Shown here: positions 9,201 to 61,260 of the stretch, in pieces
How the letters are laid out: the number at the start of each line of letters is the position of its first letter
How positions within the stretch are numbered: position 1 is the stretch's first letter
Origin: Scyliorhinus canicula
Lineage: Eukaryota
DNA length: 64,000 nt
Direction of reading: 5' to 3'
NCBI RefSeq assembly: GCF_902713615.1
Contig: NC_052154.1
Coordinates: 31,610,322 to 31,674,321, forward strand
The notes under the pieces: model-generated
Databases searched by the model: none
Told to the model about the DNA's origin: nothing
The model's input: the letters and a program-made list of their open reading frames with translations, nothing else
Made by a program: the position numbers and the translations under genes

Positions 9201-12200
9201 AGCTGGGAGTGCGTTCCACGCTCCAACCAGTCTCTGAGTAAAGAACCTACCTCTGACATCCCTCCTATATCTTCCACCATGAACCTTATAGTTATGCCCC
9301 CGTGTGACAGTTATATCCACCTGAGAAAACAGTCGCTGAATGTCCACTCTATCTATCCCTCTCATCATCATATACACCTCAATTAAGTCACCTCTCATCC
9401 TCCTTCGCTCCAATGAGAAAAGCCCTATCTCCCTCAACCTTTCCTCATAAGACCTACCCTCCAATCCAGACAGCATCCTGGTAAATCTCCTTTGCACCCT
9501 TTCCAATGCTTCCACATCCTTCCTATAATGAGGTGACCAGAACTACACACAATACTCCAAATGTGGTTGAACCAAGGTCTTGTACAGTTGCAGCATAACC
9601 TCACAGCTCTTAAACTCAATCCCCCGGTTAATAAATGCTAACACACTATAGGCCTTCTTCACGGCTCTATCCACTTGGGTGGCAACCTTCAGAGATCTGT
9701 GGACATGAACTCCGAGATCTCTCTGCTCCTCCACATTCTTCAGAACCCTGCTGTTAACCCTGTAATTCGCATTCAAATTTGTCCTACCAAAATGAATAAC
9801 CTCACACTTGTCAGGGTTAAACTCCACCTGCCACTTTTCAGCCTATCTCTGCATCCTATCAATGTCTCTTTGCAGCCGACAACAGCCCTCCATATTATCC
9901 ACTACTCCACCAATTTTGGTGTAATAAGCAAATTTACTAACCCAACCTTCAACTCCATCCTCATTGATAAAAATCACAAATAGCAGAGGACCCGGCACTG
10001 ATCCCTGTGGTACACTGCTGGTGACTGGGCTCCAGGGTGAAAATTTACCATCTACCACCACCCTCTGCATTCTATGTGATAGCCAGTTACTGATCCAATC
10101 AGCCAAATCTCCCTCTATGCCAAGCCTCCTTACTTTCTGCATGAGCCGCCATGGGGCACCTTATCAAACGCCTTACTAAGATCCATGTATACAACATCAA
10201 CTGCTCTACCTTCATTTATGTACTTAGTTACTTCCTCATAGAATACAGTCAAACTTGTGAGGCAAGACTTACCCCTCACAAATCCGTGCTGACTTTCCTG
10301 GATTAAGCTATATCTTTCCAAATGATTATAAATCCTATCCCTCAGGACCCTTTCCAATAATTTACCTATGACCGAAGTGAGACTAACCAGCCTATAATTC
10401 CCAGGGTTATACCTATTCCCTTTCTTGAACAAGGGGACATTTGCCTCTCTCCAGTCTTCTGGCACTATTCCCAAAGACAGTGAGGACATAAAGATCAAAG
10501 CCAAAGGCTCTGCAATCTCATCCCTCGCCTCCCAAAGAATCTTAGGATATATCCCATTAGGTCCAGAGGACATATCTATCCTCTGGCTTCTCAATTTCTA
10601 ACACATTCCTTCCGTATATCTACCTCCTCCAGCCTACCAGCCTGTATCGTACTATCCTCCTCAACAACATGGCTCCTCTCCTTTGTGAACACTGAAGAAA
10701 AGTATTCATTTAGGGCTTCTCCTATATCTTCAGACTCCATAAACACATTCCCACTACTGTCCTTGACCGGCCCTAACTTCACCTTGGTCATTCTTTTGTT
10801 CCTCACCTAAGTGTAAAAAGCCTTGGGGTTTTCCTTGATCCTACCTGCCAAGGACTTCTCATGCCCCCTCCTAGCTCTCCTAAGCCTTTTCTTGAGCTCC
10901 TTCCTAGCTATCTTGTACCCCTCAAGTGCCCTAACTGAATGTTTTCTCATCCTTACATAAGCCCCCTTCTTCCTCTTGACAAGACATTCAACCTCTTTTG
11001 TAAACCATGGTTCCCTCACTCGAGCATTTCCTCCCTGCCTGACGGGGACATACATATCAAGGACATGCAGTATTTGCTCCTTTGAACAAGCTCCACCTCT
11101 CAATTGTGCCTATCCCTGACAGTTCCTGTTTCCATCTTATGCTCCCCAATTCTTGCCTAAAGGCATTGTAATTAGGTGACCGCTCCTTTCCTATTTCTAA
11201 CTTCAGCCCACAATACCTCAGTAGACAGATCCTCCTCAAACTGCCTTTCTGCAGTCATTATACTATCCTTGATTAACAATGCTACTCCTCCACCTCCTTT
11301 ACCACCTCCCCTAATCTTACTGAAACATCTAAATCCCGGAACCTCCAACAACCATTCCTGCCACTGTTCTATCCATGTCTCCGTAATGGCCACAACATCG
11401 TAGTCCCAGGTACCAATCCATGCTTCAAGCTCATCAACCTTATTCCTGATGCTCCTCGCATTGAAATATACACACTTCAAACCACCTTCATGCCTGCAGG
11501 TCCACTCTTGTGACCTTGGTACCTTCCTCAGTCCTGCAGTACCCTCGGTACCTTCCTCAGTACTGCACTAGCCTTGCTAGCTGTGAAGCTATTTCCCAAC
11601 TGTAGTGCCCTCGGGTAAGGAGTGGGAGAGAGGAAGAAGTAGAAAAGCTAAATAAAATCTGTTTATTTATACTGGTGTACACTTGGGGAAAGACAAAACA
11701 AGTGGATAGTAAACATGACAAGAAAATCTTGGATTTGGTACCCAATGTAAGAGCAGTAATGGTAGCACAGTGGGTAGCATTGTTGCCTCACAGCTCCAGG
11801 GTCCCAGGTTCGATTCCTGGTTTGGGTCACTCTGTGCGGCGTCTGCATGTTCTCCCCATGTCTGTGTGGGTTTCCTCCCACAGTTCCCAAAAGACGTGCT
11901 GTTAGGAATTTGGATATTCTCCGTGTGCCCGTATAGGCACCGGAATGTGGCGACTAGGGGAATTTCACACTAAATTTATTGCGGTATATGCCTACTTGTG
12001 ATGATCAAGATTATTTATTAATAGACAAGAGCTGAAGCTTAGTTCCCCACCTATATTTCCAAATTGCCTCCTACCTTCAATGAATTATGTAGGAATGTTG
12101 TTTGAAGTCCTTTATCGTTTGTAAAATATTACATGCGAGGGGCAGCATGGTGGCGCAGTGGGTTAGCCCTGCAGCCTCACGGCACCGAGGTCCCAGGTTC

Positions 12201-13569
12201 AATCCCGGCTCTGGGTCACTGTCTTTGTGGAATTTGCACTCTCCCTGTGTTTGCGTGGGTTTTGACCCACAACCCAAAGATGTGCAGGCTCGGTGGATTG
12301 ACTAAATTGCCCCTTAATTGGGGGGAAAAATGAATCATAGAATTTACAGTGCAGAAGGAGGCCAATCGGCCCATCGAGTCTGCACCGGCTCTTGGAAAGA
12401 GCACCCTATCCAAGCCCACACCTCCACCCCATCCCCATAACCCAGTAACCCCACCCAACACTAAGGGCAATTTTGGACACTAAGGGCAATTTAGCATGGC
12501 CAATCCACCTAACCTGCACATCTTTGGACTGTGGGAGGAAACTGGAGCACCCAGAGGAAACCCACGCACACACGGGAAGAACGTGCAGACTCCACACAGA
12601 CAGTGACCCAAGCCGGGAATTGAACCTGGGACCCTGGAGCTATGAAACAATTGTGCTAATCACTATACTACCGTGCTACCCTTGGGTAGTCTAAATCGGG
12701 TAATCTAAATTTATAATAAATAAATAAAGCTGCTAAATGCCATGGTACAGTAACTTTCTTCTTAATTTCACAGGGTTAGATGCCCGTGGATTCCTCTTTG
12801 GCCCAGTTCTGGCACAAAAATTTGGAATTGGTTTTGTGCCAGTTCGAAAGAAAGGAAAGCTGCCAGGGCCAACCTTGTCTGTCAGCTATAGTTTGGAATA
12901 CGGACAGGTAATCCCTCCTATAATAATCCTGGTTTTTTAAAAAGTGAAATATTGCAATCTTAGTGTCAATGTCGCCATTCTTCTGAGAAAGCTTATTTTC
13001 TCTCGTAGGCCGAAGTCGAGATGCAACGTGATGTTGTTCAAGCAAATCAGAAAGTTATTGTTATTGATGATTTACTTGCAACTGGAGGTACGTGATCCAG
13101 CTTTGTGTTTTCCATTTCCACAGTAATATGGGCCCAGAAATTTGCTGGAATGGGGCATCTAAGCACTAGGTTGCATTCTTTGCAAGGCTAATGGCAGCAT
13201 GATGCACATTTCCCTCCAACCACCTTGCCAAATTCTGGGCCATTATATTTACCAAGTACTGTGGAAAAACCACACTTTATTATCATAGGAATACTGTACA
13301 TGCTTGAGATTTAAAACTGCATTTCAAAGCAAGGTATGAAAGTTAGCAAAAAATTCTTGATTTTGTGCAAATTTTATAGATGTTTATTTTCAAAATGTAA
13401 TCCTGTGTTATTTGTCTTTGATACAGGTACTCTAGCAGCCGCCTGTGAATTGCTGAACAAAGTGGGAGCTGATATTCTTGAGTGTCTGATAATAATTGAA
13501 ATGACAGCGCTAAATGGCATAAAGAAACTGGGTTCTGTGTCTGTCCACTCACTTCTACAGTACAACTAA
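162..13569 (+). CDS. APRT: Adenine phosphoribosyltransferase, complete gene: join(162..259,8700..8803,12774..12907,13009..13087,13427..13569), 558 nt, 185 aa
   Basis: All introns are GT..AG and phases join into one frame. Translation [39 protein letters not shown]...[13 protein letters not shown]...RKKGKLPG...YSLEYGQ/AEVEMQ...[21 protein letters not shown]...SLLQYN matches vertebrate APRT, including the PRPP-binding motif and five-exon layout. Confidence 0.97.
381..2195. repeat. 37-bp minisatellite, about 49 tandem copies (CAGCATTGATCAGCTCCTGCAGCATGGGCACTCGGTC), APRT intron 1
   Basis: Directly visible head-to-tail repeat with no spacers; variation mostly at CACTCGGTC/CATTTGGTC/CACTCTGTC. Confidence 0.98.
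4250..4634 (+). mobile_element. Solo LTR (385 bp) with 5-bp TSD GGGAC
   Basis: Starts TG, ends CA; GGGAC at 4245..4249 and 4635..4639; two CCAAT boxes, TATAAA near 4363 and AATAAA at 4559. Confidence 0.85.
5078..5165 (+). pseudogene. Intron-containing tRNA-Tyr(GTA), probably a pseudogene
   Basis: CCTTCGGTAGCTCAGCTGGTACAGCAGAGGACTGTAG + 15-nt intron (5115..5129) + ATCCTTGGGTCACTGGTTCAGTTCTGGCTTGAAAGA is collinear with vertebrate tRNA-Tyr (73+15 nt); anticodon at 5111..5113; about 9 substitutions versus the recalled consensus, including in the B box. Confidence 0.88.
6208..6916. mobile_element. CpG-rich MITE-like element with terminal inverted repeats (TIRs)
   Basis: GGGGCTGGATTCTC ... GAGAATCCAACCCC; internal GCGCATGCGC palindromes; related copies elsewhere in the window. 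Confidence 0.75.
7358..8190. mobile_element. Older MITE-like element of the same TIR class
   Basis: GGGCGCGGTTCTC ... GAGAATTGTGCCC imperfect TIRs around a GC-rich body. Confidence 0.6.
8700..8803 (+). CDS. APRT: APRT exon 2
   Basis: Acceptor ctctctctttttttcag; [34 protein letters not shown]; donor gtaagt. Confidence 0.95.
9042..11575 (-). mobile_element. CR1-clade LINE, decayed ORF2 (endonuclease + RT) in APRT intron 2
   Basis: Minus-strand fragments [82 protein letters not shown]; (TTCTA)n-type 3' tail at 9042; frameshifts and deletions. Confidence 0.93.
12139..12681. mobile_element. Tail-to-tail pair of tRNA-derived SINEs (+ 12139..12330, - 12333..12681)
   Basis: A box TGGCGCAGTGG and B box GGTTCAATCCC followed by the shared GGGTCACTGTC..GTGGAGT core, in opposite orientations. 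Confidence 0.85.
12774..12907 (+). CDS. APRT: APRT exon 3
   Basis: Acceptor tttcacag; [45 protein letters not shown]; donor gtaatc. Confidence 0.97.
13009..13087 (+). CDS. APRT: APRT exon 4
   Basis: Acceptor ttttctctcgtag; [26 protein letters not shown]; donor gtacgt. Confidence 0.97.
13427..13569 (+). CDS. APRT: APRT exon 5 (last coding exon)
   Basis: Acceptor tttgatacag; [47 protein letters not shown] then TAA. Confidence 0.96.
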
Positions 13570-16049
13570 GCAATTGTATCTTGCTGAATTGAGATTGCCT
13601 TGCTGTATTTCACATTTCCTTCAATAATTGCTATGCAGGTTTACAATTCTTTTCTGTTTTCAATATGTGGCCATTTTATCATTTGATGAAAGCAGCAAGA
13701 ACAAAAACTGCCATGCAGTTATTTCCTGTTTCGTTTTCGTGTTTGATTAGTAGCAGAATTGTAACTATTAACTGAGAATTAAAAATTAGTTAATGGATGT
13801 TCTCACTGAAAATTAAATTACATAGCTTTTAAAAGCTTCTAATTTTATCCAGTTTAAAACCAGATTTTAAATGCACATGAAACAATTGGATACTAAAGTT
13901 CTGGGTAATTCTTCGGAATTCATTTGAGAAGACAACTAGTTTGCAGTTTTATACAGTTCACTTCACTTTCTCCAGAGGCAATGATTCTTGAGTGGCAGTT
14001 CTATGGTGCTTGTTACCCTTTGGTATCTGACCCAAGTGACTGTTGATTCACGTGGCCCACAGCAGCGCATGGGAGAAGATCATTTGGGGGGGGGGGGGGG
14101 GTCTTTCAATTACTGTCGTGGATGATTTTTAAATGCCCTCTGAAACCCTGGAGTGCTAAGGCTAGTTGTTGTACCTCGTACCTCCTGTTCTGGCTAAGAA
14201 CTGAGAGCACAGATTGGTGTGTGAGCTTGAAACTTTCTTGGTCTATGTGGTTCTGTTACTCCCTCAAACTATGCAGTTATTGGGGAAACCCCACAAGCCA
14301 TTTTAAATTCCCCAAGCCACCGGTGTCAGAAGCACCCATTTCCGATGCTATCTGTTTTGATTGAGTTAAACTGACTGCCAGAATAGAATAAGCCTATTAT
14401 TGATCCATTAGGATGGTTTCAGATATATACCTGAACCATGATTGCAGGCCTCCATTGTAGAGAGGTCTTGGTGCCCACAATATGTTGTGTGATTCAAATT
14501 TTGATAATGTGTATGTGGGCTCCTATCTTTGTCACAAGTATAGTTTGACAAAAATAAACAAATAGAAATATATCGAAAGTAATACAGATTTTCAGTAGTT
14601 TGATAATGCACACATTGCAGAAGGATAGAGACAATTGTGTAGATTTTACAAAAGGCGTGCCTGCCTTTCCTGTCACTGAGGTACGGGCCTCGGTTGAATT
14701 TGACTGATGAACTCAAGCTGCAAGCATCAGTTTGTTATCTTGAAGCATTAGCCAGTTTCAGGCCACAGCATTGTTGGCAGGCTTGGGGCATTGGCAAGTC
14801 TCAACAGCACGGTAGCATAGTGGTTAGCACAATTGCTTCACAGGTCCAGGGCCCCAGGTTCGATTCCCAGCTTGGGTCACTGTCTGTGCGGAGTCTGCAC
14901 GTTCTCCCCGTGTGTGTGTGTGGGTTTCCTCCGGATGTTCCGGTTTCCTCCCACAGTCCAAAGTGTTGGGTGGGGTTACTGGGTTATGGGGATAGGGAGG
15001 AGATGTAGGCCTGGGCAGGGTGCTCTTTCCAGGAGCCGGTGCAGACTGTATGGGCTGAATGGCCTCCTTCTGTACTGTTAATTCTATGATTCGTCTGAAA
15101 TCGGCCCACAATGTTTCTGTGAATCCAGCTGTAGCATTTCTTCCAACCCTGCAAAAATACAACAATTGGAAGAAAATGTAAATATATTTGTGGATGTAAG
15201 CTCTGTCATACTAATGCAATTTTCTGTGGTAATGAAAGTGACTGCACATAGTGGTGATTGTCCACTAAGAGAGTCACCTGGCTTGGGGGACCAAATCACC
15301 TCAGTGGGTGGAGTCCCATCTGAAGCAGAAGACATGAAGGGACTGGGGCAGCCAGGGAGCTGCAGGCCTCTGCACGGTTTAAAAAAAAATGTTGTGTTTC
15401 TCATGGAGTCTGTAAATGTGCATCGTTACATTTGGTGACGAGGTTAGGGTGGATTATGATGACACAGCCTCTGCTTCGACCCCTGTGAGCATCCTGTTTT
15501 ACGTGAAGTTTTTATATTTAAAAAAAAACTCACCTGGCTGCCTCTCTTTGGGCGAATAGACAGATGTTGACATATTGCCAGACCCCGAGGGCCGGACACG
15601 GAGCGGACCTGGAATAGCTGATTCTGTCAGAAGTTGAGAAATGTATGATTTGGGGAGGGGGCGGGGGGGGGGGAGGAGAGAGGAGAAAATAACTCTCCAG
15701 CAAGAGCTGTGACTTAAGTTTGGCAGCAAAGTTTTGTGAGAAGTCCCCAACTTGCTGAAAAGTTTTATAAACTTTTGCCAGATCTTGCAGTGAAGTTAAG
15801 AAACAAAATGGGCACAGGCTCTCCAAACGTTAGGAGAAAACAAAACAGCAGAGATCACATTACATGAATAAAAAGAGATGACGTTTTAAAAGGTCAATTA
15901 AAGTTCAAAGGATGAGCAGTTAGGTGTGTGCCAAGATTTCAAAAGCATAGGAAAAACACAAGGTGCTGACAGCTCATTGGGGAATAAAAAAAGACCTGAA
16001 GCATTTAAAGAGGTAGTGCATTTAAAATGATAATATATTTAATATGTAC

Positions 16050-16863
16050 AGCAACACAAGAAAGAACAAATGGTTCTGGAGAAGAAAATTGGAGAAGACA
16101 CAAGATCGAGGGCAACTCTGCAAAAAGTTTCATAAGGACCGAAGACCTTCAGGGAAGAGGCAACATAAGACTCCAGAAGGAGGTAAACAAGAGAATTGCA
16201 GAATGGAAACGAGTCAACACTTCATTCGAAACAGACCTGACCAACAGCGAAGAAAAAAGGGGTGAGCTGAAGTTAAGACAAGTTGAAATGGATGTTCCAC
16301 TTGTGAAATGTGTATATATACAGTAAGAACATACAGAAGAAATACAGAAATTAAAGACTTCAAATGAAACTAGGAACTATTGAACATAAGAGGAATCAGC
16401 AAAAATAATTAATGCTTGAGAGAAGATATTAAAACAATAGGATTAAATAACTGGCAACACACTGGGGGGGGGGGGGGGGGGGGGGGTGGCAAGGAAGTTG
16501 CAAACAATTACAAAATGAAATGAAGCAGAAGGAGAACTTAATGAAATAATGGAGAATAAGTTGAACTCCACGATAAAACATCTAGAAGATCAAAACTGCA
16601 AAGAATTGAATCGTAAGAATAGAAGAAGGGAAGCTTAACAACGGGGAATTAACTGAAGAGGTAGAAACATTGCAATTGACAGCAGAATCAGCAACTCAGA
16701 CAGAAAGAAACTGAGGTTGCGTGTCAGAACAAGATTACTGAAATGGTCACGCGAATGGAAAAGCACAAGAACCAACATGACAAAATGGTTGATGATATTT
16801 ATGCTGCGTTGAAATGCTGGAAAGAGAAGAAACTATCAAATGACTTGAGCACCAGAAACTGAA
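16050..16863 (+). pseudogene. SYCP1: Processed pseudogene fragment of synaptonemal complex protein 1 (coiled-coil region)
   Basis: Frame-hopping translation gives KQKENLMK-MENKLN..., ELTEEVETLQLTAE..., KETEVACQNKITEMVTRMEKHKNQHDKMVDD, matching recalled mammalian SYCP1 LEEVEK...KEIDKRCQHKIAEMVALMEKHKHQYDKIIEE. Many stops and frameshifts, no introns. Left boundary approximate. Confidence 0.8.
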
Positions 16864-17975
16864 TACCACGACCATTCCTTCGCACGTGACAGACCGACAG
16901 TGTGAATGAACTGTCAATATGTAAGACAATATTGGGATCATATGTACCTCCTTACGTTATAATGCAAGGTGCTTGACAGAGCAAGGTTCAAAGTGGGACT
17001 GGAGAGTGAGGTATGTGTCACGAAGGCGGAGAACAGTCGAGGACAGAACTCGGTAAGCAGCAAGTAGCATAGCTTGAGTGGTGCCACTCCGTGGCAATCC
17101 AGGAGTCTCTCCTACTCTTACGGCTACATCTCTCATCCCTCAGGGTGCAGTGAAGATTTATCAGAATTTACTAAATTGAAATCCCTCATCCCATGTGGAA
17201 GCTGGAGAAGTTGGGACTGTTTTTCGTAGTCGAGAGAAGGTTAAGTAGAGGGTGTAGTTGATGGTGCAAATCAGGAGAAATAATTTTTGTTGGCATGCTG
17301 TCTCGTGATCAGGGGAAATCGGTAAAATGTCTAACAGAATGTTCTTTAAAAAGCATCTCTTGACCTAGAATGGGCCATCTGAAACGGTGATGAAAGCCAA
17401 TTCACCAGTAACTTTGAAAGGGGAATTGAATGTATATACTGGAAAATAGATTTTCTGGGCTGTAGAAAATAGGACGAATTCCAAAGCTCTTTAAAAGAAT
17501 TGGCAGATGTGATGGATTGAATGGCTGCCTGCAGTGCTGTTGGCAAAAGACTGGAGAACATGAGGATGCCGATTAAAGGTGAATGGTAAAAAAATCAACA
17601 GTGATACGAGGAAAGGCATGTTGCACAGTGGAGGGCAAGGAGCTGCAATGCACTGCCTGAGAGCATGGTGGGGGAAAATTCAATTGTAACTTTTAAAGGG
17701 AATTGGATAAGCACCTGAAGACAAAACAACTGCAGTGCTACAAGGAAAAGCTGCTGGAGTCTATAACTAGCTGAACTCGTGCAACCACAGACTTACTGAC
17801 CGCCTCCTGTGCTGGAACCATTCCGTGAATACATCAAAGGAAATTCTTGAGAAACAAAAGCCCCAGTTTTAACCTAAAATCTGTCCAACGGAATGGTCAA
17901 TTAATTAATCAGGTTATCAGACTACTGGACAGGCTGGGTTATCACTAAACCTTCGAACCATCTTTTTAAGTATCC

Positions 17976-18460
17976 TGTTATGGGCCTGGGTTCAGAAAAC
18001 CACAAAGTGTATCATGGAGTTCACCTGACCCACAACTTTTACTAGATTGTGGTATGGGGAGCACACGGCCCACTCTACAGGTGTGGTACAGCAGAAATGG
18101 AAAAGTATTTTTTAAAGCAAAACAATGTTTATTCTATGAAATCAAGTTAACCTTTTTAAAACATAGTGAACATCTTAGCAACCATTAATTCCAACCCCCA
18201 AAGACCACAACACTAAGTAATCCTTTAAGCTTTCCTTTTAACATCCATAAGACGTAAAAAAAAAAAACCTTTAACAGAAGTACCTCAGGTTTAACTTCAC
18301 TACCGAGAACAGTTACCACATTGAAATCAGCAATTGGACATTTTTAAGCTTTCACACACATCCTGCTGTGATTGCAGCTTCTCCAAAACTAAAATGAAAC
18401 CAAACCCACCCTGCAGCAAAAAGCCTAAAGCGAAAGTAAAAAGCTGACATACAGCCTAGC
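17976..18460 (-). mobile_element. Probable truncated LTR
   Basis: Begins TGTTA with an abrupt composition change; AATAAA on the minus strand near 18130; second terminus and TSD not found. Confidence 0.45.
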
Positions 18461-19024
18461 TGAAATTAGTGAGTGCCTGGCACATCATTTTCTGTAAACA
18501 TGGAATAATGCTGAGTCTGCAGAGAAAGTAGACAACCTTGCCAGAGAAAACAATCTGAAGCTTAGAAGGAAGAAGTACCAAAACAAAAGCCTGAACTTCA
18601 GAGAGACATTGACTGTACATAGGGAAAATTCTGAATATTCAATTCACCTGACAGCATGTCTTTCGGGACTTGTGGGAGGAAACCGGAGCAAACCCACAGA
18701 CACACGGAGAACGTACGGGTTCCACAGTGACCCAAGGCGGGAATCGAACCTGGGACCCAGGAGCTGTGAAGCAACAGTGCTAACCACTGTGCTACCGTAC
18801 TGCTCCTGGCCTGTGTTTCTAGCAGACACAACCAATACATCCCATATCTCTGCTTGCATAGCTTTAACTGGCATCTCTACTTTAAAATCACTTGCCAATT
18901 TAATTAGCTTGTCGTTTCAAAGCCCTTGTAAATAAATTGATGGCAAGACCTCCACCTGAAGAAAAGCTTTAGCATCTTCCACAGCCCATCCAGTTATGGT
19001 ATTACAAACCTGGCGCCTCTTTAA

Positions 19025-19912
19025 TGTATACCATACCCCAAATCACTGACTACCATTCCCAAGATACTAGACGAGCCCCCAAACTGTCACAACACCCTGG
19101 CCTAGCACGCATCAAATCTAGCCCGAGCTGGAGGTGCATCACAAGTGAAATTAGATTTTATTTTAAGAGGTCCTTGCTTCAGCCCAATAAACTAATTAGC
19201 TCAGTCTTGAACTTCAAAACACAAGTAACCTTTTAGTAAGTGCAGTATTATAATTAAACAGACAGAAAATGTAACTATTACCCCCTTTCCCCAAGTCCTT
19301 TCCTAACTCACCCCAGTCTACACCTACACCCAGGAAAGGGTGGTGGAAAGAGAAAGAAAATAATAAAAATGACAGGATAAGGATCTTTGATGAATCAGGA
19401 TGACTTCAGTTAGCCAATGTCTTTCCGAAGTTCAGGCTTTCATTCTTCTCTGGCAAGGTTGTCTACTTTCTCTGCAGACTCAGGATTATTTCAGGTTTAC
19501 AGCAATGAATGTGGAAGGCACTCCCTGCTATTCCGAACAATAGAGCAATTCTTTCACTTCAGTAAAGAGAGAATTCCTTTCATTTTCCAAGGTCTAAACA
19601 CTTCTGCCCAGCTCTCTCAGAAAGCATCACGCAGGAACCAATTATTGACTGTCAGGCAGAATATTGTGCCATGGGCAACCCACTGGTTGCCTGCTAACCA
19701 ATCGAACAGACTCCCTCCGAAGCTGGTTCCCAAGGTGCCGAAAAGTCTGGCGGCTTCTCTCCAAAATACAAAACCTAGTAACTCGGGTGTCCTGGCAAGC
19801 AGGCCGTTTCAACTTTGAACCTTCTGCTTAAAAGCATTATGGGTCCACAGACCAAAATAATTAAGAATAAAAGAAACGGGAAGAAAGGAACTAAACAGGA
19901 AGGGCTTTTACA
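19025..19912. mobile_element. Possible old solo LTR
   Basis: TGTA...TTTACA termini; part of it recurs inverted at 18470..18610; no clean TSD. Confidence 0.4.
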
Positions 19913-21350
19913 TAGTGCAGTTCACTTTACTTTGATGCGTAATTATTGTTTAACAAACCGCAGCAATCTGTCCTGCAAACTGGTACATCATTCAGGAACT
20001 CATGGAGGTGCTCAAATCCAATTCCTGGATCATCTGAACGAAGTCAGTAGCCACAGGACATACATGGTCAGGAGAGGGATAGTGCAACAAGATAAATATC
20101 AGACAATCTCAGCACGTCTGACAGCATCTGTGGAGAGATAAGGGAGCCAACATCGAGTCTGGGCGACTCTCGTCAAAGCTACTTTTTTTTTTTACATCCA
20201 CCTGGACAATTTGACAGTTCCACTGCCACACTCCTTCAGTAAGGCACTGGAATATCAGCCTAGATAATGCTTTCATCTTTTAAGTAGCACTTAAACCCGT
20301 TGCTTTGTGACTCAGGTGACAGCAAGACAACCTGAATGGAAACGATGTCAACTGCAAGACAATTTTTTTTTTTTTTTTTGCATGTTCAGACAAAATGTTA
20401 GGTTTAACAAATAAAACTTGAGCAATGCCAAAAATATTTTGTTCACGTTCCATTAATTTCCCCCTCCTGTCCTCCCGTAGGACTGACAACTTTCTAGCAT
20501 TCTATCATCCCTGGCAGCTTGCTGCCTCATTGGAATGGCAGCAATTCAAATGTGAGATTTTCCAGCAAACTCCACAGCCCATTAGACATCACAGCAAAGC
20601 ATTTAATTGATAGACACGCAACTGAGAGCAGGAGCATTGTTTTGTGTCCCTAACCCAGTAGTGCCTTATAATCCCTACAGTAGAGGTCATCATTTGGCCC
20701 AGCGAGTCTGCACAAACCCTTTGAAAGAACACTCCATCAAGCCCACATAACAACCCCCCCCCAATCCCAATAAACCCCTCAAACTTAGCCTACACATATT
20801 TGAGCACTTATGGACAATTGATCATGACCAATCCATCTAAACTGCACATATTTGGACTGTGGGTGGAAACCCACACAGACACAGGAAGAATGTGCAAACT
20901 CCATCCATACAGTTACCAAGGCCAGAATTGAACCCGGGTCCCTGGCACCGCAAGGCATCAGTGCTAACCACGTGTGCTGCCAATATGAACAAAGCTGTGC
21001 TCAGATACTCACAGCCTGACCTGTTTAACAAAGACTTATGAAAGACACACTGGATAATGGATTTGTAAGATCTGTTGAAAAGAGCCTCAAGAAAATTTGT
21101 AGAAGCGATGCGGTGTTGTAGAATAAAATCAGTGCAGTCTATAAACAACATATTAAAATAGAGAATAAACTTTACAGAGGGTGGTGAAAACAAAAGCTGC
21201 TTGCACAGCAAGCTGTCTTGTTTGCAAGAACATATATTTTAAATTTTAAACCTATTTACAACCAAATAATCCCAAATCAGCGATGCACAAAATAAAAGTC
21301 AGCAAGCAAAGAAGTTACTTCAAGCAAAATGGTGCAACATTTAATCAAAA

Positions 21351-21356
21351 TTTATT
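21351..21356 (-). terminator. Candidate CDT1 polyadenylation signal AATAAA
   Basis: AATAAA about 480 nt after the stop, with an adjacent ATTAAA and T/GT-rich sequence downstream on the minus strand. Another AATAAA lies at 21819..21824. Confidence 0.5.
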
Positions 21357-21834
21357 AATTTAAAAGCCTCCCTCCACACACAAACCCAACACTTGATTTT
21401 CAGTTTAACATTAATCAACAGCATACTGCAGATCCTCATTGCACACAAACAGTTCATAATCCAACTTTATAACCCTGCTACCTATTTTGGGAACAAAGCA
21501 GAAAGAAACTCCTGCTCCAGGAACACAATTCAACAGCATTACTCAAAAGCAAGTCTTATTCTTTGAATCTTCAGTACAGCACTCAATTAGTTTCCCTCCC
21601 TTATTTTTAAAACTAGCATCTGACAATTCCAATACAGTATCAAGATTGGAATCTTCAGTGGAGAAACCCAAGGATTGGACTCAAGTTTCTTCCAAATACA
21701 ACGCATCATTGCCAAGCAAACTGTCCAGACAATTCGCACTGGGAAACAAAACACATTTCTCCTACATACTTCACATTTTTATATTTGACTTTCCAAAGCT
21801 CAGTACAGAACCTAGTCCTTTATTTAAAAAAAAA

Positions 21835-21998
21835 TTACACTTTTTCCTCCTCTTTTATTTTTTCCGCAATTTTCTCAGCAACCACATTCAGCTCAGTGCT
21901 CCTATTCAGCTTCAGGTACACGTCTTTTCTGATTTGATGGACAGTCAGCCAGTCTGGAACGATGTCAGCTAGTAACCGTAAATGTTTCTCCATTTCGT
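21835..21998 (-). CDS. CDT1: CDT1 exon 10 (last coding exon)
   Basis: [54 protein letters not shown] then TAA. Confidence 0.96.
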
Positions 21999-50910: not shown

Positions 50911-50962
50911 AAGCCACAAAACCTGGGTGGGGGGAGGGGGGGGAGGGGGGGGGGGGGGGGGT

Positions 50963-54802: not shown

Positions 54803-56759
54803 TAGGGCTTTGGCAGCTGAAGACATGATCACTAACACTGAAGCAATTAAAATGACAGAATTCCACGAGTGCAGAAACCCTGAAGATGTACAGGGCAGAG
54901 GAGATTGAAATGATAGGGGAGTGCCAAAGACTTGCAGGAATTCAAAAACAGAGACGAGAATTTAAAATTCAGGGTATTGAAATGAAATTAAAATTGCTTA
55001 TTGTCATGAGTAGGCTTCAATTAAGTTACTGTGAAAAGCCCCTAGTCGCCACATTCCGGCGCCTGTTCGGGGAGGGTGGTACGGGAATTGAACCGTGCTG
55101 CTGGTCTGCTTTAAAAGCCAGCGATTTAGCCCAGTGTGCTAAACCAGCCCCTGGTTATTGCTTAACCTGGAGCTAGTGTGGGTGGTGAGCAGAGGGCTGA
55201 TGGGTCAAAGAGATTTGGTGTGAGCTGGAACAGGGCCAGCAGAGTTTTGGATAGGCTCAAGTTTACAGAGGGTAGAGTGTGGGACAGCAGCTTGACGTGC
55301 TTTGGAATAGTCAAGTCGAAGGGTAACAAGGGCACGGATGAGTGTTTCAGCAAAAAATGAGCAGAGACTCTAGTGGAGTCAGGTGATGTTACGGAGGTGG
55401 TATTAGATGGTCTTAATGATGGTGCAAATATGTGGTTGGAAGCTCACGTTGAGGTCAAAATACGATACGAAAGCTGTGAACAGGGATCGGATGGTGGCAC
55501 AGTGGTTAGCACTGCTACCTCACAGCGCCAGGGACCCGTGTTCAATTCCGAACTTCGGTGACTGTCTGTGTGGAGTTTGCATTTTTTCTCCCTGCGTCTG
55601 CGTGGGTTTCCTTTGGTTTCCTCCCTCAGTCCAAAGAAGGGAACGTTGGGTGGATTGGATATTCTAAATTTCCCCTTAGTGTCCAAATGGTTAGGAAGGC
55701 TAACAGGGGAGTGGGCCTAGGTTAGGGTGCTCTTTCAGAGGGTTGGTGCAGATTGGATGGATCGAATGGCCTCCTTCTGCACTGTAGGGATTCTATGATT
55801 TTATGAACAGTTCCAGTCTCAAGACAGTTGTCGGGTAGAGGGATGATATAGTGGCTAAGCAATGGAGTTTGCCCTGGGATCAATGACAATGGCTTTGATA
55901 TTCCTCATATTTAAATGGAGGAAATGTTTGCTCATCCAGTATTGGATGTTGGACAAGCAGTCTGACGATTTAGACCATGGAGGGGTCAGGAGAGATATTG
56001 GGGAAATAAAACCGAATGTTGTTTGTACATATGAAAATTAATGCTGTGATTGTCAATGTTGTTGCCAAGGGGCAGAATGTATTTGAGAAACAGAAGGAGA
56101 AAGGGACAGCTCCTTAAGATACACTAGAGAAGGAAGAGATGCCTTTACAAGTAATTCTCTGGCTACGACTAAAAGATGAGAGTGGAACCAGATAACAGTC
56201 CCGCCCGACCAAATGATGGTGGAGAGGCATTGGAGGAATGTGGCGCTAATGACCGAGAAAGGCGAGGGGAAAAGTTTACCTTTGTCACAGTCACACAGGA
56301 TGTATTTTGTATCTTTGATAGAAGTTTCAGTACTGTGGCAGGGGCTGGTCCTGATTGGAGGGGTTTAAAGTTCTGGGAAAGGTGGGAACCTTCAAGAATG
56401 ATGGTGAGGTATGGGAGATTGGCGATGGTGTGGTCATTTGGAACGATGGAGCTCGTATCAGCTAACGGTGAAGCAAGGAAGTTGCCTGTCTGCAGTTTGG
56501 TAGGCAAAGGGTTAGGGAGCACAAGGCGAATCTCATGATCAAGGGAAATACACCTCAGCGTCACTGGGAGTGGGAGTACTGTGAGTTGATGCTTGGGATT
56601 GGGACCCCTAATCGGTATGTGGTATGTAGAGTGTCATGTGGTACTGTCAATGGACGAGTAGTCCAGAGAGCCACGGTAATATGCCCTGGTAATATATAGG
56701 GATCCAGGTTCGAATTACACCATGGCAGATGGTGAAATCTGAATTAAAAGTCTAATGTG

Positions 56760-57255
56760 GGTGGCACGGTAGCACAGTGGGTAACACTGGGGCTGGTTTA
56801 GGGGCTGGTTTAGCTCACCAGGCTAAATCGCTGGCTTTTAAAGCAGACCAAGCAGGCCAGCAGCACGGTTCAATTCCCGTACCAGCCTCCCCGGACAGGC
56901 GCCGGAATGTGGCGACTAGGGGCTTTTTCACAGTAACTTCATTGAAGCCTACTCGTGACAATAAGCGATTTTCATTTAATTTTTTCATTTTCAACACTGT
57001 TCTTCACAGCGCCAGGGTCCCAGGTTCGATTCTCGGCTTGGGTCGCTGTCTGTGCGGAGTCTGCACATTCTCCCAGTGGCTGTGTGGGTTTCCTCCCACA
57101 AGTCCCGAAAGACGTGCTGATAGGTAAATTGGATATTCTGAATTCTCCCTCCATGTACCCAAACAGGCGGTGGAATGTGCTGACTAGGGGCTTTTCACAG
57201 TAACTTCATTTCTATGTTAATGTCAGCCTACTTGTGACAATAAATATTATTATTA
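56760..57255 (+). mobile_element. SINE nested inside another SINE
   Basis: GGGGCTGGTTTAG..-headed SINE (about 56789..56992) splits a host SINE head; AACACTG on both sides. Confidence 0.7.
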
Positions 57256-59229
57256 TGATGACCATGAAACCATTGTTAATTGTTGTAAAAATCCATTAAT
57301 GTCCTTGAGGGAAGGAAATTTGCCATCCTTACCTGGTCTGCTCTACATGTGACTCTAGATCCACAGCAATGTGGTTGCCAATGTGGTTGAAAGCCACTCT
57401 GTTCAAGGGCAATTAGGGATGTACAGTAAATGCTGGCCCAGCCAGCGATGCCTATATCCCAAGAATGAACAAAAATAAATGTTCTGGGGACACGAGTGAG
57501 CGATGGTGACCATGAAGTTATCCTCGACCTTGATTATTATATTTAAAAAAAAATATGGTTCGCCAATGTCCTTTAGGGAAGGAAATCTGTCCTTACCTGG
57601 TCTGGCCTACATCTGACCCCAGATTCATAGCAATGTGCCTTTTGAGGTGCGGCACAGTAGCTTAATGGTTAGCACTGTTGCTTCACAGCGAAGGATCTCA
57701 GGTTCGATTCCAGGCTTAGGTATCTGTCTGTATGGAGTCTGCACATTCTCCCTGTGTCTGTGTGGGTTTCCTCCAGATGCTCCGGTTTCCTCCCACAAGT
57801 CCCGAAAGACGTGCTTGTTAGGTAAATTGGACATTCTGAATTCTCCCTCAGTGTACCCAAACAGGCGCCGGAGTGTGGTGACTAGGAGATTGCCACAGTA
57901 ACTTCATTGCAGTGTTAATGTAAGCCTACTTGTGACACCAATAAAGATTATTATGATTATTATTGAAATGGCTGAGCAAGCCACTCAGTTGAAGGTCAAA
58001 TAGAAATTGGCAAAGAATGCTGGCATTACCCATATCCCAACAAAGAATAAAGAACTTTGCTCGTTGGATATTGGAAAAAGATTGAGGTAATAGCTTTATT
58101 TCAAAACCCAAAGTGCAGCCTTCCTATTTTCCTAAAGCTATTTGCATATTACTTTCGGATTCGCTACATATATACAATGATCAAAGTCGGACCTCAAGCC
58201 AAATCTTGAGTGCACAGCCAGAAAAGTTCTGTCTCTGTTAACATCACTGAAGCCAGTTTAAAAACCAACTAAAGTGTGCTTGTTTGCCTGAACTGAAAGG
58301 GTCTGTAAATTTTCAGAAATGACTGGTATTCCATATTCTCTTGTGGGTAGACTTTGCGTCTGGCTGTTTTGGAGCATTTTCAGACCAGGTAGTGCTTTCC
58401 TCAGTGACTGTGGAGCATCCCTAAAAAATTTTAAAGTTATGTCACCATGTCCGATCCCTCACTTCTTTCGATAAACACAGTTTGGGGATGAATATGAATC
58501 TGCCCTATTATGTATTTTCTTTTATTTCCCTTTCTTCCCATGTACTTAATGATCTGTTGAGCTGCTCGCAGAAAAATACTTTTCACTGTACCTCGGTACA
58601 CGTGACAATAAACAAAATCCAAAATGTCCAGTAACTGAATGACCTAGGGATGGGTGGGTTGGGGGGGGGGGGGGTTCTGAGTAGCTTCCTACTCCACCTT
58701 TGCAGTAAAATTAACATTTAAAGATCAAGGGGGGGGGGGGGGGGGTTGTATAGAGTTTACCCGTATAGGGGGTCAGTTTCGCCATAAATTTGCTTTTGTC
58801 TTTGGATCTGGTGATATTAATTTTTTTTAACGTTTATGATGAATTTTCAACAAATCTTAACTCTTGCTTCTCTCTGCAGATGCTGCCTGACCTGCTGAAC
58901 ATTTCCAGCATTTGCTTTATATTTGAGAGCGTTGGAATAGCTGAGTCTTGAGATCAAACGGGCCTGAAAGCCTCACTATGCGGGTCTGTGCATACTGTGG
59001 AACTTCACCCCCAGCATCTGCAAGGGGGGGAATTAGGGGAATTGTCACCGGTTCCGTAAATTTAACGGGGCCTTTTCTGCGATCTGCAGTTTGAGAAAAC
59101 CATGCCATTCCTTCAGTAGGTGGCGGTATCATTCTAAAGCGGGAGCCCACTCTTCACATCTGTCAGGGTTCCTCTGTCAAGGGAGCAATGAATGAGAGAG
59201 ACAGCTGCCAAGTCTTAAAACATTGACGT

Positions 59230-60064: not shown

Positions 60065-60900
60065 GTGAGTGCCGTTCGGGGGACATGGGGCGGGCGTCAA
60101 TCCGGTGAATATCATCGGTTTTTCTTGTTTAAAGTTGGACAGTACAGGGCTGTGCATGTGAGGCAACTCGCCTCCTCCCCCCGCCAAAATTCACTCAACA
60201 ATTTCTCAGCTCATCACCATAGAATATTATTGGCAGCGTGCATGGTATAAACCTTTTTTAAAAAGATATTTTGTTTTGTTGTTGCCTGGAGAGGATCGAG
60301 CCAGATTAACGAGCGCGTTTTACCGAGTTAAACATCCCATGGTCGCAGAATGCCCACCCCAATTCCAAACTTCCCTGGGGGTACTGATTAAGTCGCAGGA
60401 TACAACTGCCAGAAGAAAGTCTTAAGTTTTTTTCGAACACATCTCATTTCAATGACTAGACTCCAACTTTGCAACTGAAATCATTCCACCTACTAACGTG
60501 TGAGGTAATCCAATCATTTCAGTCGGCATTTGTGGGTTTATTTTGCATTGAGGTCATTCAGAGACCTACTGCTCTGATATCAGATGACACACCACTGCTC
60601 CTGATGGTCTCTGAAGTTACCTAGACCTTTGGAATCCCCCCCCCCCCCCCCCCCCCCCGCATCCCGCACCCCGCACCCCCTGACTCGCTTTTCTCCTTTG
60701 AAGACACTGCTTAAAACCCACCTCTTTGGCCAAACTTGTGATGATCTGATCTAACGTCCCTTTTTGTGGCCCGACAGTGTCATATTTTGTTTTATCACAC
60801 TCCAATGAAGTTTATTTGAGATGTTTTATTACATTAAAGGCTCCACATAAATGATCATTGTTGTTTTAAGGTGAAGGGAGGTTCATGCAGAGCTTATCTG

Positions 60901-61260
60901 GGGCAGCAGGGCAGCATGGTGGTTAGCATAAATGCTTCACAGCTCCAGGGTCCCAGGTTCGATTCCCGGCTGGGTCACTGTCTGTGTGGAGTCTGCACGT
61001 CCTCCCCCTGTGTGCGTGGGTTTCCTCCGGGTGCTCCGGTTTCCTCCCACAGTCCAAAGATGTGCGGGTTAGGTGGATTGGCCATGCTAAATTGCCCGTA
61101 GTGTCCTAAAAAAAAAGTAAGGTTAAGGGGGGGGGGGGTGTTGTTGGGTTACGGGTATAGGGTGGATACATGGGTTTGAGTAGGGTGATCATGGCTCGGC
61201 ACAACATTGAGGGCTGAAGGGCCTGTTCTGTGCTGTACTGTTCTATGTTCTATGTTCTAT
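60901..61260 (+). mobile_element. tRNA-derived SINE with (TTCTATG)n tail; one of many copies (also about 5915..6127, 11752..12020, 14805..15090, 18625..18803, 20665..20981, 22114..22437, 38730..38947, 55490..55800, 57648..57960)
   Basis: GGGCAGCA..GGTTAGCA..CCCAGGTTCGATTCCCGGC..GGGTCACTGTCTGTGTGGAGT head and core. Confidence 0.88.

What the first reader, a model, noticed from the sequence alone, without database searches (positions are those of the whole stretch)
16050..16863. Hidden SYCP1 (meiotic synaptonemal complex) retrocopy between APRT and CDT1
Seen: a purine-rich, intron-free stretch whose broken frames read KQKENLMK-MENKLN, LTEEVETLQ and CQNKITEMVTRMEKHKNQHDKMVDD (from 16722). The ORF track misses the diagnostic part. 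Known: CQHKIAEMVALMEKHKHQYDK is the most conserved C-terminal coiled-coil block of SYCP1, and this region spans many small exons in the parent gene. Inference: a processed copy of a meiocyte-specific mRNA, so evidence of LINE-mediated retroposition in the meiotic germ line. It has since gained stops, an internal deletion and a poly-G run at about 16464..16486.
Basis: partly seen in the sequence, partly recalled or inferred. Interest (0 to 1): 0.7.

Follow-up and report, generated by a model that had tools for sequence, protein, structure and literature searches.

The report
Dead intronless SYCP1 fragment, multi-copy
Between the genes APRT and CDT1 lies a dead, intron-free scrap copied from the RNA of the meiosis gene SYCP1; it looks like one of many similar scraps in this shark genome, so it is ordinary debris with a mildly unusual history.

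Summary
Window 16338-16862 (+) is homologous and collinear to the SYCP1 central and C-terminal coiled coil (skate SYCP1 residues 354-590). Support: tblastn E 4e-24, profile E 7e-23, PDB 6f63/4yto and Pfam SCP-1 hits, and a frameshift-aware score of 287 against 39±6 for shuffles.

It runs without introns across at least five intron positions shared by the skate and turkey SYCP1 genes, so it was copied from spliced RNA. It is dead: six frameshifts, four stops, two internal deletions (15 and about 46-49 codons) and a 23-base G run.

- SYCP1 homology starts at 16338, not 16050.
- No poly(A) tail, target-site duplication or mRNA 3' end is present, so LINE mediation is not shown.
- It is probably not a lone retrocopy. 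In a DNA run with single-copy depth 3-5, parts of the stretch reach about 310, and 43-44 contigs carry parent-like letters.

This scan had already noted four other SYCP1-like fragments elsewhere in this genome, one followed up as "dozens of copies".

Expression looks like weak read-through only. It is a new member of a known kind, of low to moderate interest.

The parts
16338..16862 (+). SYCP1-derived, intronless, decayed cDNA fragment. It is collinear with skate SYCP1 (P0016) residues 354-590, equal to catshark P0001 up to residue 713.
   Evidence: Frameshift-aware alignment, 95 of 168 aligned residues identical to skate, score 287. tblastn and HMM hits. PDB and Pfam hits for 16713-16859.
16373..16378 (+). 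Ancestral exon junction 366/367 crossed without an intron.
   Evidence: Junction mapped from the skate gene L001 and the turkey gene L002.
16402..16408 (+). Site of the first internal deletion: about 15 codons, skate residues 377-391. Its 3' edge lies next to junction 390.
   Evidence: Alignment.
16464..16486 (+). Run of 23 G in place of about six purine-rich codons (parent GEKEEN), just upstream of junction 417/418 (16496-16501).
   Evidence: Similar G runs occur elsewhere in the window.
16606..16620 (+). Site of the second internal deletion, about 46-49 codons (skate residues about 458-506). It removes most of exon 459-480 and the first half of exon 480-523. A frameshift lies here.
16661..16663 (+). 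Ancestral exon junction at residue 523 crossed inside an in-frame match.
16767..16769 (+). Ancestral exon junction at residue 559 crossed inside the strongest in-frame block (16692-16853).
16863..16891 (+). Possible short continuation of the unit past junction 590/591. No protein-level similarity is recognisable here.
   Evidence: An 839-base contig in run X1, 83% identical, aligns to 16647-16891. A unique DNA contig resumes at 16896.
16150..16337 (+). Purine-rich stretch upstream of the SYCP1 part. It appears to belong to the same repeated unit, and its origin is unknown.
   Evidence: DNA run X8 depth is 65 at 16000-16199 and 309 at 16200-16399, against 4.6 at 15800-15999. A diverged X8 contig aligns from 16190. 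No SYCP1, Pfam or PDB match.
13315..13569 (+). Context: last coding exon and stop of APRT. RNA contigs put the 3' UTR end near 14069 or 14833.
   Evidence: APRT motifs. RNA contigs.
21838..22005 (-). Context: last recognised coding exon of CDT1, which is convergent with APRT.
   Evidence: Pfam CDT1_C and CDT1 hits for 21838-22005, 24980-25201 and 27479-27742 on the - strand.

Best explanation
Window 16338-16862 (perhaps to 16891) is a non-functional, intron-free copy of an internal part of a shark SYCP1 messenger RNA. It covers the central to C-terminal coiled coil, about 237 codons of roughly 1000. The copy was reverse-transcribed and inserted into the intergenic DNA between the convergent genes APRT and CDT1, or it was carried there as part of a larger unit. 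It then decayed neutrally through frameshifts, stops, two deletions and a G-run expansion. It is most likely one member of a dispersed repeated unit of about 0.7 kb (about 16150-16891 here) that contains this SYCP1 piece and is present in tens to about a hundred copies in the genome. It makes no protein. At most it is carried passively in weak read-through transcripts. Shown: homology, absence of introns, decay and excess DNA depth. Inferred: how the unit was amplified and when.
For: Homology: (z about 41). Processed origin: the skate gene L001 has introns at residues 366/367, 390, 417/418, about 459, 480, 523, 559 and 590/591, and the turkey gene L002 has the same positions. Catshark isoform X3 skips exactly 367-417. 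The window runs through 366/367, 417/418, about 459, 523 and 559 with no inserted DNA. Shark origin: 62-67% identity to shark SYCP1 against 54-57% to batoid SYCP1, and 5 of 6 diagnostic sites are shark-like. Decay: six frameshifts and stops at 16417, 16438, 16444 and 16860. Multi-copy: DNA run X8 has depth 3-5 on the flanks but 309 at 16200-16399 and 316 at 16600-16799. In that run 43-44 contigs carry A at 16365, 16664 and 16673. These letters restore the parental lysines (M>K, E>K, Q>K), the pattern expected if this copy has drifted from a parent-like family. Four other SYCP1-like fragments were noted elsewhere in this genome (leads, not tested here). Silence: oligo-dT raw reads give depth 0-0.9 across 15200-17600, against 11 on the APRT 3' UTR. 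Contigs in the probable RNA runs lie at 7-11, against 411 on that UTR.
Against: I could not read any other copy, so the unit's ends, its consensus and its carrier are unknown. Summed contig depth is a poor copy-number measure, and at 80% likeness purine-rich, A-rich contigs might add spurious depth. All the listed majority differences are changes to A. No other copy lies in this 64-kb window. No terminal repeats, target-site duplication or poly(A) mark it as a mobile unit.
Confidence: 0.7

Rival explanations
1. It is a lone, classical LINE-mediated processed pseudogene of SYCP1. One meiotic-germline retroposition event happened at this locus, and later deletions removed the 5' and 3' parts.
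For: The stretch is intronless across at least five junctions. SYCP1 retrocopies are known in mouse and amphioxus (PMC5803294). An L1 is present in the same window (note s1-243688). No second copy lies in the window.
Against: There is no poly(A) and no target-site duplication, and the fragment is internal and lacks the mRNA 3' end that L1 priming would give. DNA depth is 60-80 times the flank depth, with 43-44 variant contigs. Other SYCP1-like fragments were noted in the same genome.
Confidence: 0.2
2. It is a fragment made by reverse transcription of a circular or otherwise aberrantly spliced SYCP1 RNA, with template switching. This is what a follow-up agent of this scan proposed for a mosaic SMC1B/SYCP1/RABGAP1 insertion elsewhere in the genome.
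For: It is an internal fragment with no poly(A). The 3' end of homology (residue about 590) and one edge of each deletion lie within about 2 codons of exon junctions. CircRNA-derived pseudogenes are a described class (PMC4897178). Note s1-207378 gave the lead.
Against: No back-splice order is present: the flanks 15600-16337 and 16857-17600 match no part of SYCP1 in any arrangement. No second gene is recognisable in the flanks. The edge-junction coincidence is 3 of 6 edges, p about 0.09, and alignment edges are ambiguous by a few codons.
Confidence: 0.08
3. It is a DNA-level duplicate of SYCP1 exons, or it is a chance or compositional match to some other coiled-coil protein.
For: Purine-rich coiled-coil coding sequence gives weak spurious matches: the upstream tblastn tails are of this kind.
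Against: All significant hits are SYCP1. The reversed-profile control scores 49 against 287. Junctions 523 and 559 lie inside uninterrupted in-frame matches, whereas in the skate these exons are 1.4-2 kb apart.
Confidence: 0.02

Closest known systems
Mouse Sycp1-ps1, a processed pseudogene of Sycp1 (Sage et al. 1997, as described in PMC5803294)
   Same: It is an intronless copy of the meiotic gene SYCP1 at an unrelated locus. [quoted passage not shown]
   Different: The shark copy is a short internal fragment of about 525 bases with no poly(A). It appears to belong to a many-copy family, whereas the paper describes only two retrocopies in mouse. It is also in a cartilaginous fish.
Amphioxus SYCP1 retrogene (PMC5803294)
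   Same: It is an SYCP1 copy made from spliced RNA, which shows that SYCP1 RNA is prone to retroposition in chordates.
   Different: The amphioxus copy is intact, expressed and has replaced the parent gene. This one is dead and fragmentary, and multi-exon SYCP1 genes are annotated in the sharks examined.
CircRNA-derived pseudogenes (Dong et al. 2016, PMC4897178)
   Same: Both are internal exon-only fragments without a poly(A) tail.
   Different: The defining back-splice exon order was looked for here and not found.
Gene fragments carried and amplified by transposable elements or as part of dispersed repeats (general knowledge)
   Same: A host-gene piece present in many diverged copies, joined to unrelated sequence (16150-16337).
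   Different: No carrier element, terminal repeat or coding capacity could be identified. The captured piece is spliced cDNA, which points to an RNA intermediate.

Membership tests
Processed pseudogene / retrocopy | Significant homology to a multi-exon parent gene | tested here: met
   SYCP1: tblastn E 4e-24, HMM 66.5 bits, PDB and Pfam hits.
Processed pseudogene / retrocopy | Parental introns precisely absent | tested here: met
   Junctions 366/367, 417/418, about 459, 523 and 559 of the skate and turkey genes are crossed with no inserted DNA. The same species' parent gene could not be read.
Processed pseudogene / retrocopy | 3' poly(A) tract | tested here: not met
   No A run follows 16862-16900. 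The nearest runs are 7 A near 17580 and 12 A near 18260, inside other repeats.
Processed pseudogene / retrocopy | Target-site duplications flanking the insert | tested here: inconclusive
   Only chance-level short repeats were found: GACCGA at 16137 and 16892, and AATATGTA at 16041 and 16917. The insert ends are not known precisely.
Processed pseudogene / retrocopy | Includes the mRNA 3' end, with truncation on the 5' side (L1 priming) | tested here: not met
   Homology stops at residue about 590 of 830-1024. No SYCP1 similarity lies downstream to 22 kb.
Processed pseudogene / retrocopy | Disabling mutations and no selective constraint | tested here: met
   Six frameshifts, four stops, two deletions and a G run.
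Dispersed repeat family / element-borne gene fragment | Many diverged copies in the genome | tested here: met
   DNA run X8 reaches about 310 against 3-5 on the flanks, with 43-44 contigs carrying variant letters. This is an indirect measure. It is consistent with the notes.
Dispersed repeat family / element-borne gene fragment | Copies share sequence beyond the gene piece and have defined termini | tested here: inconclusive
   A diverged DNA contig aligns from 16190, which is 148 bases upstream of the SYCP1 part. No terminal repeats were found. The other copies could not be read.
CircRNA-derived pseudogene | Back-splice junction, with a downstream exon joined to an upstream exon | tested here: not met
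   The flanks show no SYCP1 similarity in any order.
Functional SYCP1 paralogue or retrogene | Open reading frame and own transcription | tested here: not met
   The longest SYCP1-frame ORF is 39 codons. Oligo-dT reads give depth 0-0.9.

The most novel reading that the evidence does not exclude
A spliced internal piece of the meiotic gene SYCP1, fused to unrelated sequence, has been amplified to about a hundred copies in a shark genome by an RNA-mediated route that leaves no poly(A). One such route would be repeated reverse transcription of a stable or circular germline SYCP1 RNA with template switching; another would be capture by a non-L1 retroelement. The genome would then hold a fossil record of an unusual germline reverse-transcription pathway.
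Probability: 0.25. Interest if true: 0.6.

Novelty: new member of a known kind. Interest (0 to 1): 0.3.

Why it matters
By itself this is a dead gene scrap in intergenic DNA with no expected effect on APRT, CDT1 or meiosis. It matters in two modest ways. First, it corrects annotation: SYCP1-like hits in this genome are mostly debris and should not be counted as paralogues or as independent retrogenes. Second, if many similar copies are confirmed, the family would show how a germline-expressed RNA fragment can be multiplied in a cartilaginous fish. Retrocopy formation is little studied in that group, and the L1 hallmarks are missing here.

Tried and rejected
- **SYCP1 upstream of 16338:** frameshift-aware profile alignment of 15600-16337 against residues 1-356 and 357-830 scored no better than shuffles. 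The weak collinear tblastn tails back to about 16144-16207 are compositional.
- **SYCP1 downstream:** profile search of 16800-22000 and alignment of 16857-17600 found nothing.
- **Identity of the flanks:** Pfam, PDB and Rfam gave nothing. The ESM Atlas returned only low-recognition PrP8 look-alikes, which I treat as noise.
- **Mobile-element hallmarks:** direct, inverted and tandem repeat searches found only chance-level matches.
- **Other copies as small predicted proteins:** the word-index search with the 49-residue piece found no candidate.
- **The shark parent gene:** both catshark SYCP1 genes span about 740-750 kb, so no DNA was returned. Isoforms X2 and X4 are not on record.
- **Exon-precise deletions (splice isoform of the source RNA):** 3 of 6 edges lie near junctions, p about 0.09, which is not significant.
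- **Findings search by sequence:** blank.

Full report
**What is there.** The + strand between about 15700 and 16900 is purine-rich: AT and GC skews are 0.2-0.4, and 16338-16862 is 69% purine.

**The match is to SYCP1 and is far beyond chance.**
- The 49-residue piece 16713-16859 hits only SYCP1 among solved structures (6f63 and 4yto, E 5.5e-7). The alignment lands on the human block RCQHKIAEMVALMEKHKHQYDK.
- The same piece passes Pfam SCP-1 at profile positions 697-734 of 787.
- In the 1.84-billion-protein library its best hit is P0001 (E 5e-10), which is SYCP1 isoform X4 of Scyliorhinus canicula.
- tblastn of that protein against the whole 64-kb window finds only this place (E 4e-24).

**Extent and anatomy.** I aligned six chondrichthyan SYCP1 proteins, built a position-specific profile from them, and ran a frameshift-aware alignment against it.
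- The window is collinear with skate SYCP1 (P0016) residues 354-588 over 16338-16856. Of 168 aligned residues, 95 are identical.
- The score is 287, against 39.3±6.0 for triplet shuffles and 49 for the reversed profile.
- Lesions: six frameshifts (16358, 16390, 16466, 16546, 16619, 16695); stops at 16417, 16438, 16444 and 16860; a deletion of residues 377-391; a deletion of residues about 458-506; and the G run in place of about six codons.
- Upstream of 16338 and downstream of 16862 there is no SYCP1 similarity, collinear or permuted.

**The source was spliced RNA.**
- The Leucoraja erinacea SYCP1 gene (L001, 61 kb) has small exons with boundaries at residues 366/367, 390, 417/418, about 459, 480, 523, 559, 590/591 and 615.
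- The turkey gene (L002) has the same boundaries once mapped through a protein alignment. These intron positions therefore predate the split of cartilaginous and bony vertebrates.
- Catshark isoform X3 lacks exactly residues 367-417, which shows two of these boundaries in a shark.
- The window runs straight through 366/367 (16373-16378), 417/418 (16496-16501), about 459 (near 16609), 523 (16661) and 559 (16767). The last two lie inside uninterrupted in-frame matches.
- In the skate these exons are 1.4-5 kb apart.

**Lineage.** The copy is 62-67% identical to shark SYCP1 and 54-57% identical to batoid SYCP1. It takes the shark state at 5 of 6 diagnostic sites. At the DNA level it is about 80% identical to the skate coding sequence over 170 bases. 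It is an old, neutrally decaying copy of a shark-lineage SYCP1.

**What does not fit a classical retrocopy.**
- The piece is internal: about 237 of roughly 1000 codons, with no mRNA 3' end.
- No poly(A) tract follows it, and no convincing target-site duplication or terminal repeat flanks it.
- Its 3' end and one edge of each deletion lie within about two codons of exon junctions. That is 3 of 6 edges, with p about 0.09, so I draw no conclusion from it.

**Copy number.** I laid contigs of a DNA run (X8) on 13600-19599 at 80% likeness.
- Unique flanks have summed depth 3-5; for example, 15800-15999 is at 4.6.
- Depth is 65 at 16000-16199, 309 at 16200-16399, 48 at 16400-16599, 316 at 16600-16799 and 49 at 16800-16999.
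- At 16365, 16664 and 16673, 43-44 contigs carry A where the window has T, G and C. Each of these letters restores the parental lysine (M>K, E>K, Q>K). That is the pattern expected if this copy has drifted from a parent-like family.
- A diverged contig aligns from 16190, upstream of the SYCP1 part. Unique contigs stop at 16139 and resume at 16896. The repeated unit here is therefore about 16150-16891.
- An 839-base contig in run X1 is 83% identical over 16647-16891 and then continues into unlike sequence. It could be another family member or the parent mRNA.
- Caveats: summed contig depth is a rough measure, all the listed majority changes are to A, and I could not read any other copy.

The scan's own notes list four other SYCP1-like fragments on other pieces of this genome. 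One was followed up as "one of dozens of similar copies of a repeated unit". Another was read as a mosaic of several genes' circular RNAs. I treat these as leads that agree with the depth result. For this locus I tested the mosaic and back-splice idea and found no support for it.

**Context and expression.**
- APRT lies on the + strand, with exons at 12737-12937 and 13009-13092 and its last exon ending at the stop at 13569.
- CDT1 lies on the - strand, with exons at 21838-22005, 24980-25201 and 27479-27742 (Pfam).
- The genes are convergent and the fragment sits in the 8-kb gap, 2.8 kb beyond the APRT stop.
- In the probable RNA run X1, depth is 411 on the APRT 3' UTR (to 14069), 40 out to 14833, and 7-11 across 15054-18027, fragment included. 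In X6 it is 245 out to 14833 and about 3-6 beyond.
- In oligo-dT raw reads (X22), depth over 15200-17600 is 0-0.9, against 11 on the UTR.
- Many small probable RNA runs hold this exact copy's words.
- The simplest reading is weak read-through or background, not a gene.

**Comparison with what is known.** SYCP1 retrocopies are documented: mouse Sycp1-ps1 and Sycp1-ps2, and the amphioxus replacement retrogene (PMC5803294). CircRNA-derived pseudogenes are a described class (PMC4897178).

**Verdict.** This is a new member of a known kind, a dead SYCP1 cDNA fragment. The mildly unusual feature is that it seems to belong to an amplified unit lacking L1 hallmarks. The scan has already met this family on other DNA of the same genome. 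Interest is low to moderate.

Noticed in passing
window 14805-15100 and 18620-18810 (also 11750-11920, 12130-12690, 22105-22435, 55490-55800, 56995-57160, 57645-57850, 60900-61080): Copies of a very abundant SINE-like element. They are 70-87% identical to each other within the window, and summed DNA depth reaches the millions. Contigs join the 14870 and 18740 copies on opposite strands, as expected for inverted copies.
   Followed up: partly
window 15652-15676, 16464-16486, 31955-31989, 50936-50962, 60636-60661: Long G (or C) mononucleotide runs recur in the window. Reads seem to be cut at 16454-16498, so run lengths in the assembly may be unreliable.
   Followed up: no
Scyliorhinus canicula and S. 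torazame SYCP1 (P0131, P0018): The annotated SYCP1 genes of both catsharks span about 740-750 kb, against 61 kb in the skate and 21 kb in the turkey. Catshark isoforms X2 and X3 carry a tandem 35-residue duplication. These may be giant introns, or the gene models may chain across dispersed SYCP1-like copies.
   Followed up: no
window 13570-14833: RNA contigs indicate two APRT 3' UTR ends: a major one near 14069 and a minor extension to about 14833 at roughly a tenth of the depth.
   Followed up: no
window 17800-18600: High-copy repeat of unknown class (DNA depth 9,000-500,000) directly downstream of the unique stretch 16896-17800. A 12-A run near 18260 may be its tail.
   Followed up: no
run X32 (organism B): One run of a second species holds about 6% of the exact words of 16338-16891. 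This hints that a related species carries this copy or the family.
   Followed up: no
window 16318-16349: A small tandem duplication (11-12 base unit, 2.7 copies) sits exactly at the 5' edge of the SYCP1 homology.
   Followed up: no
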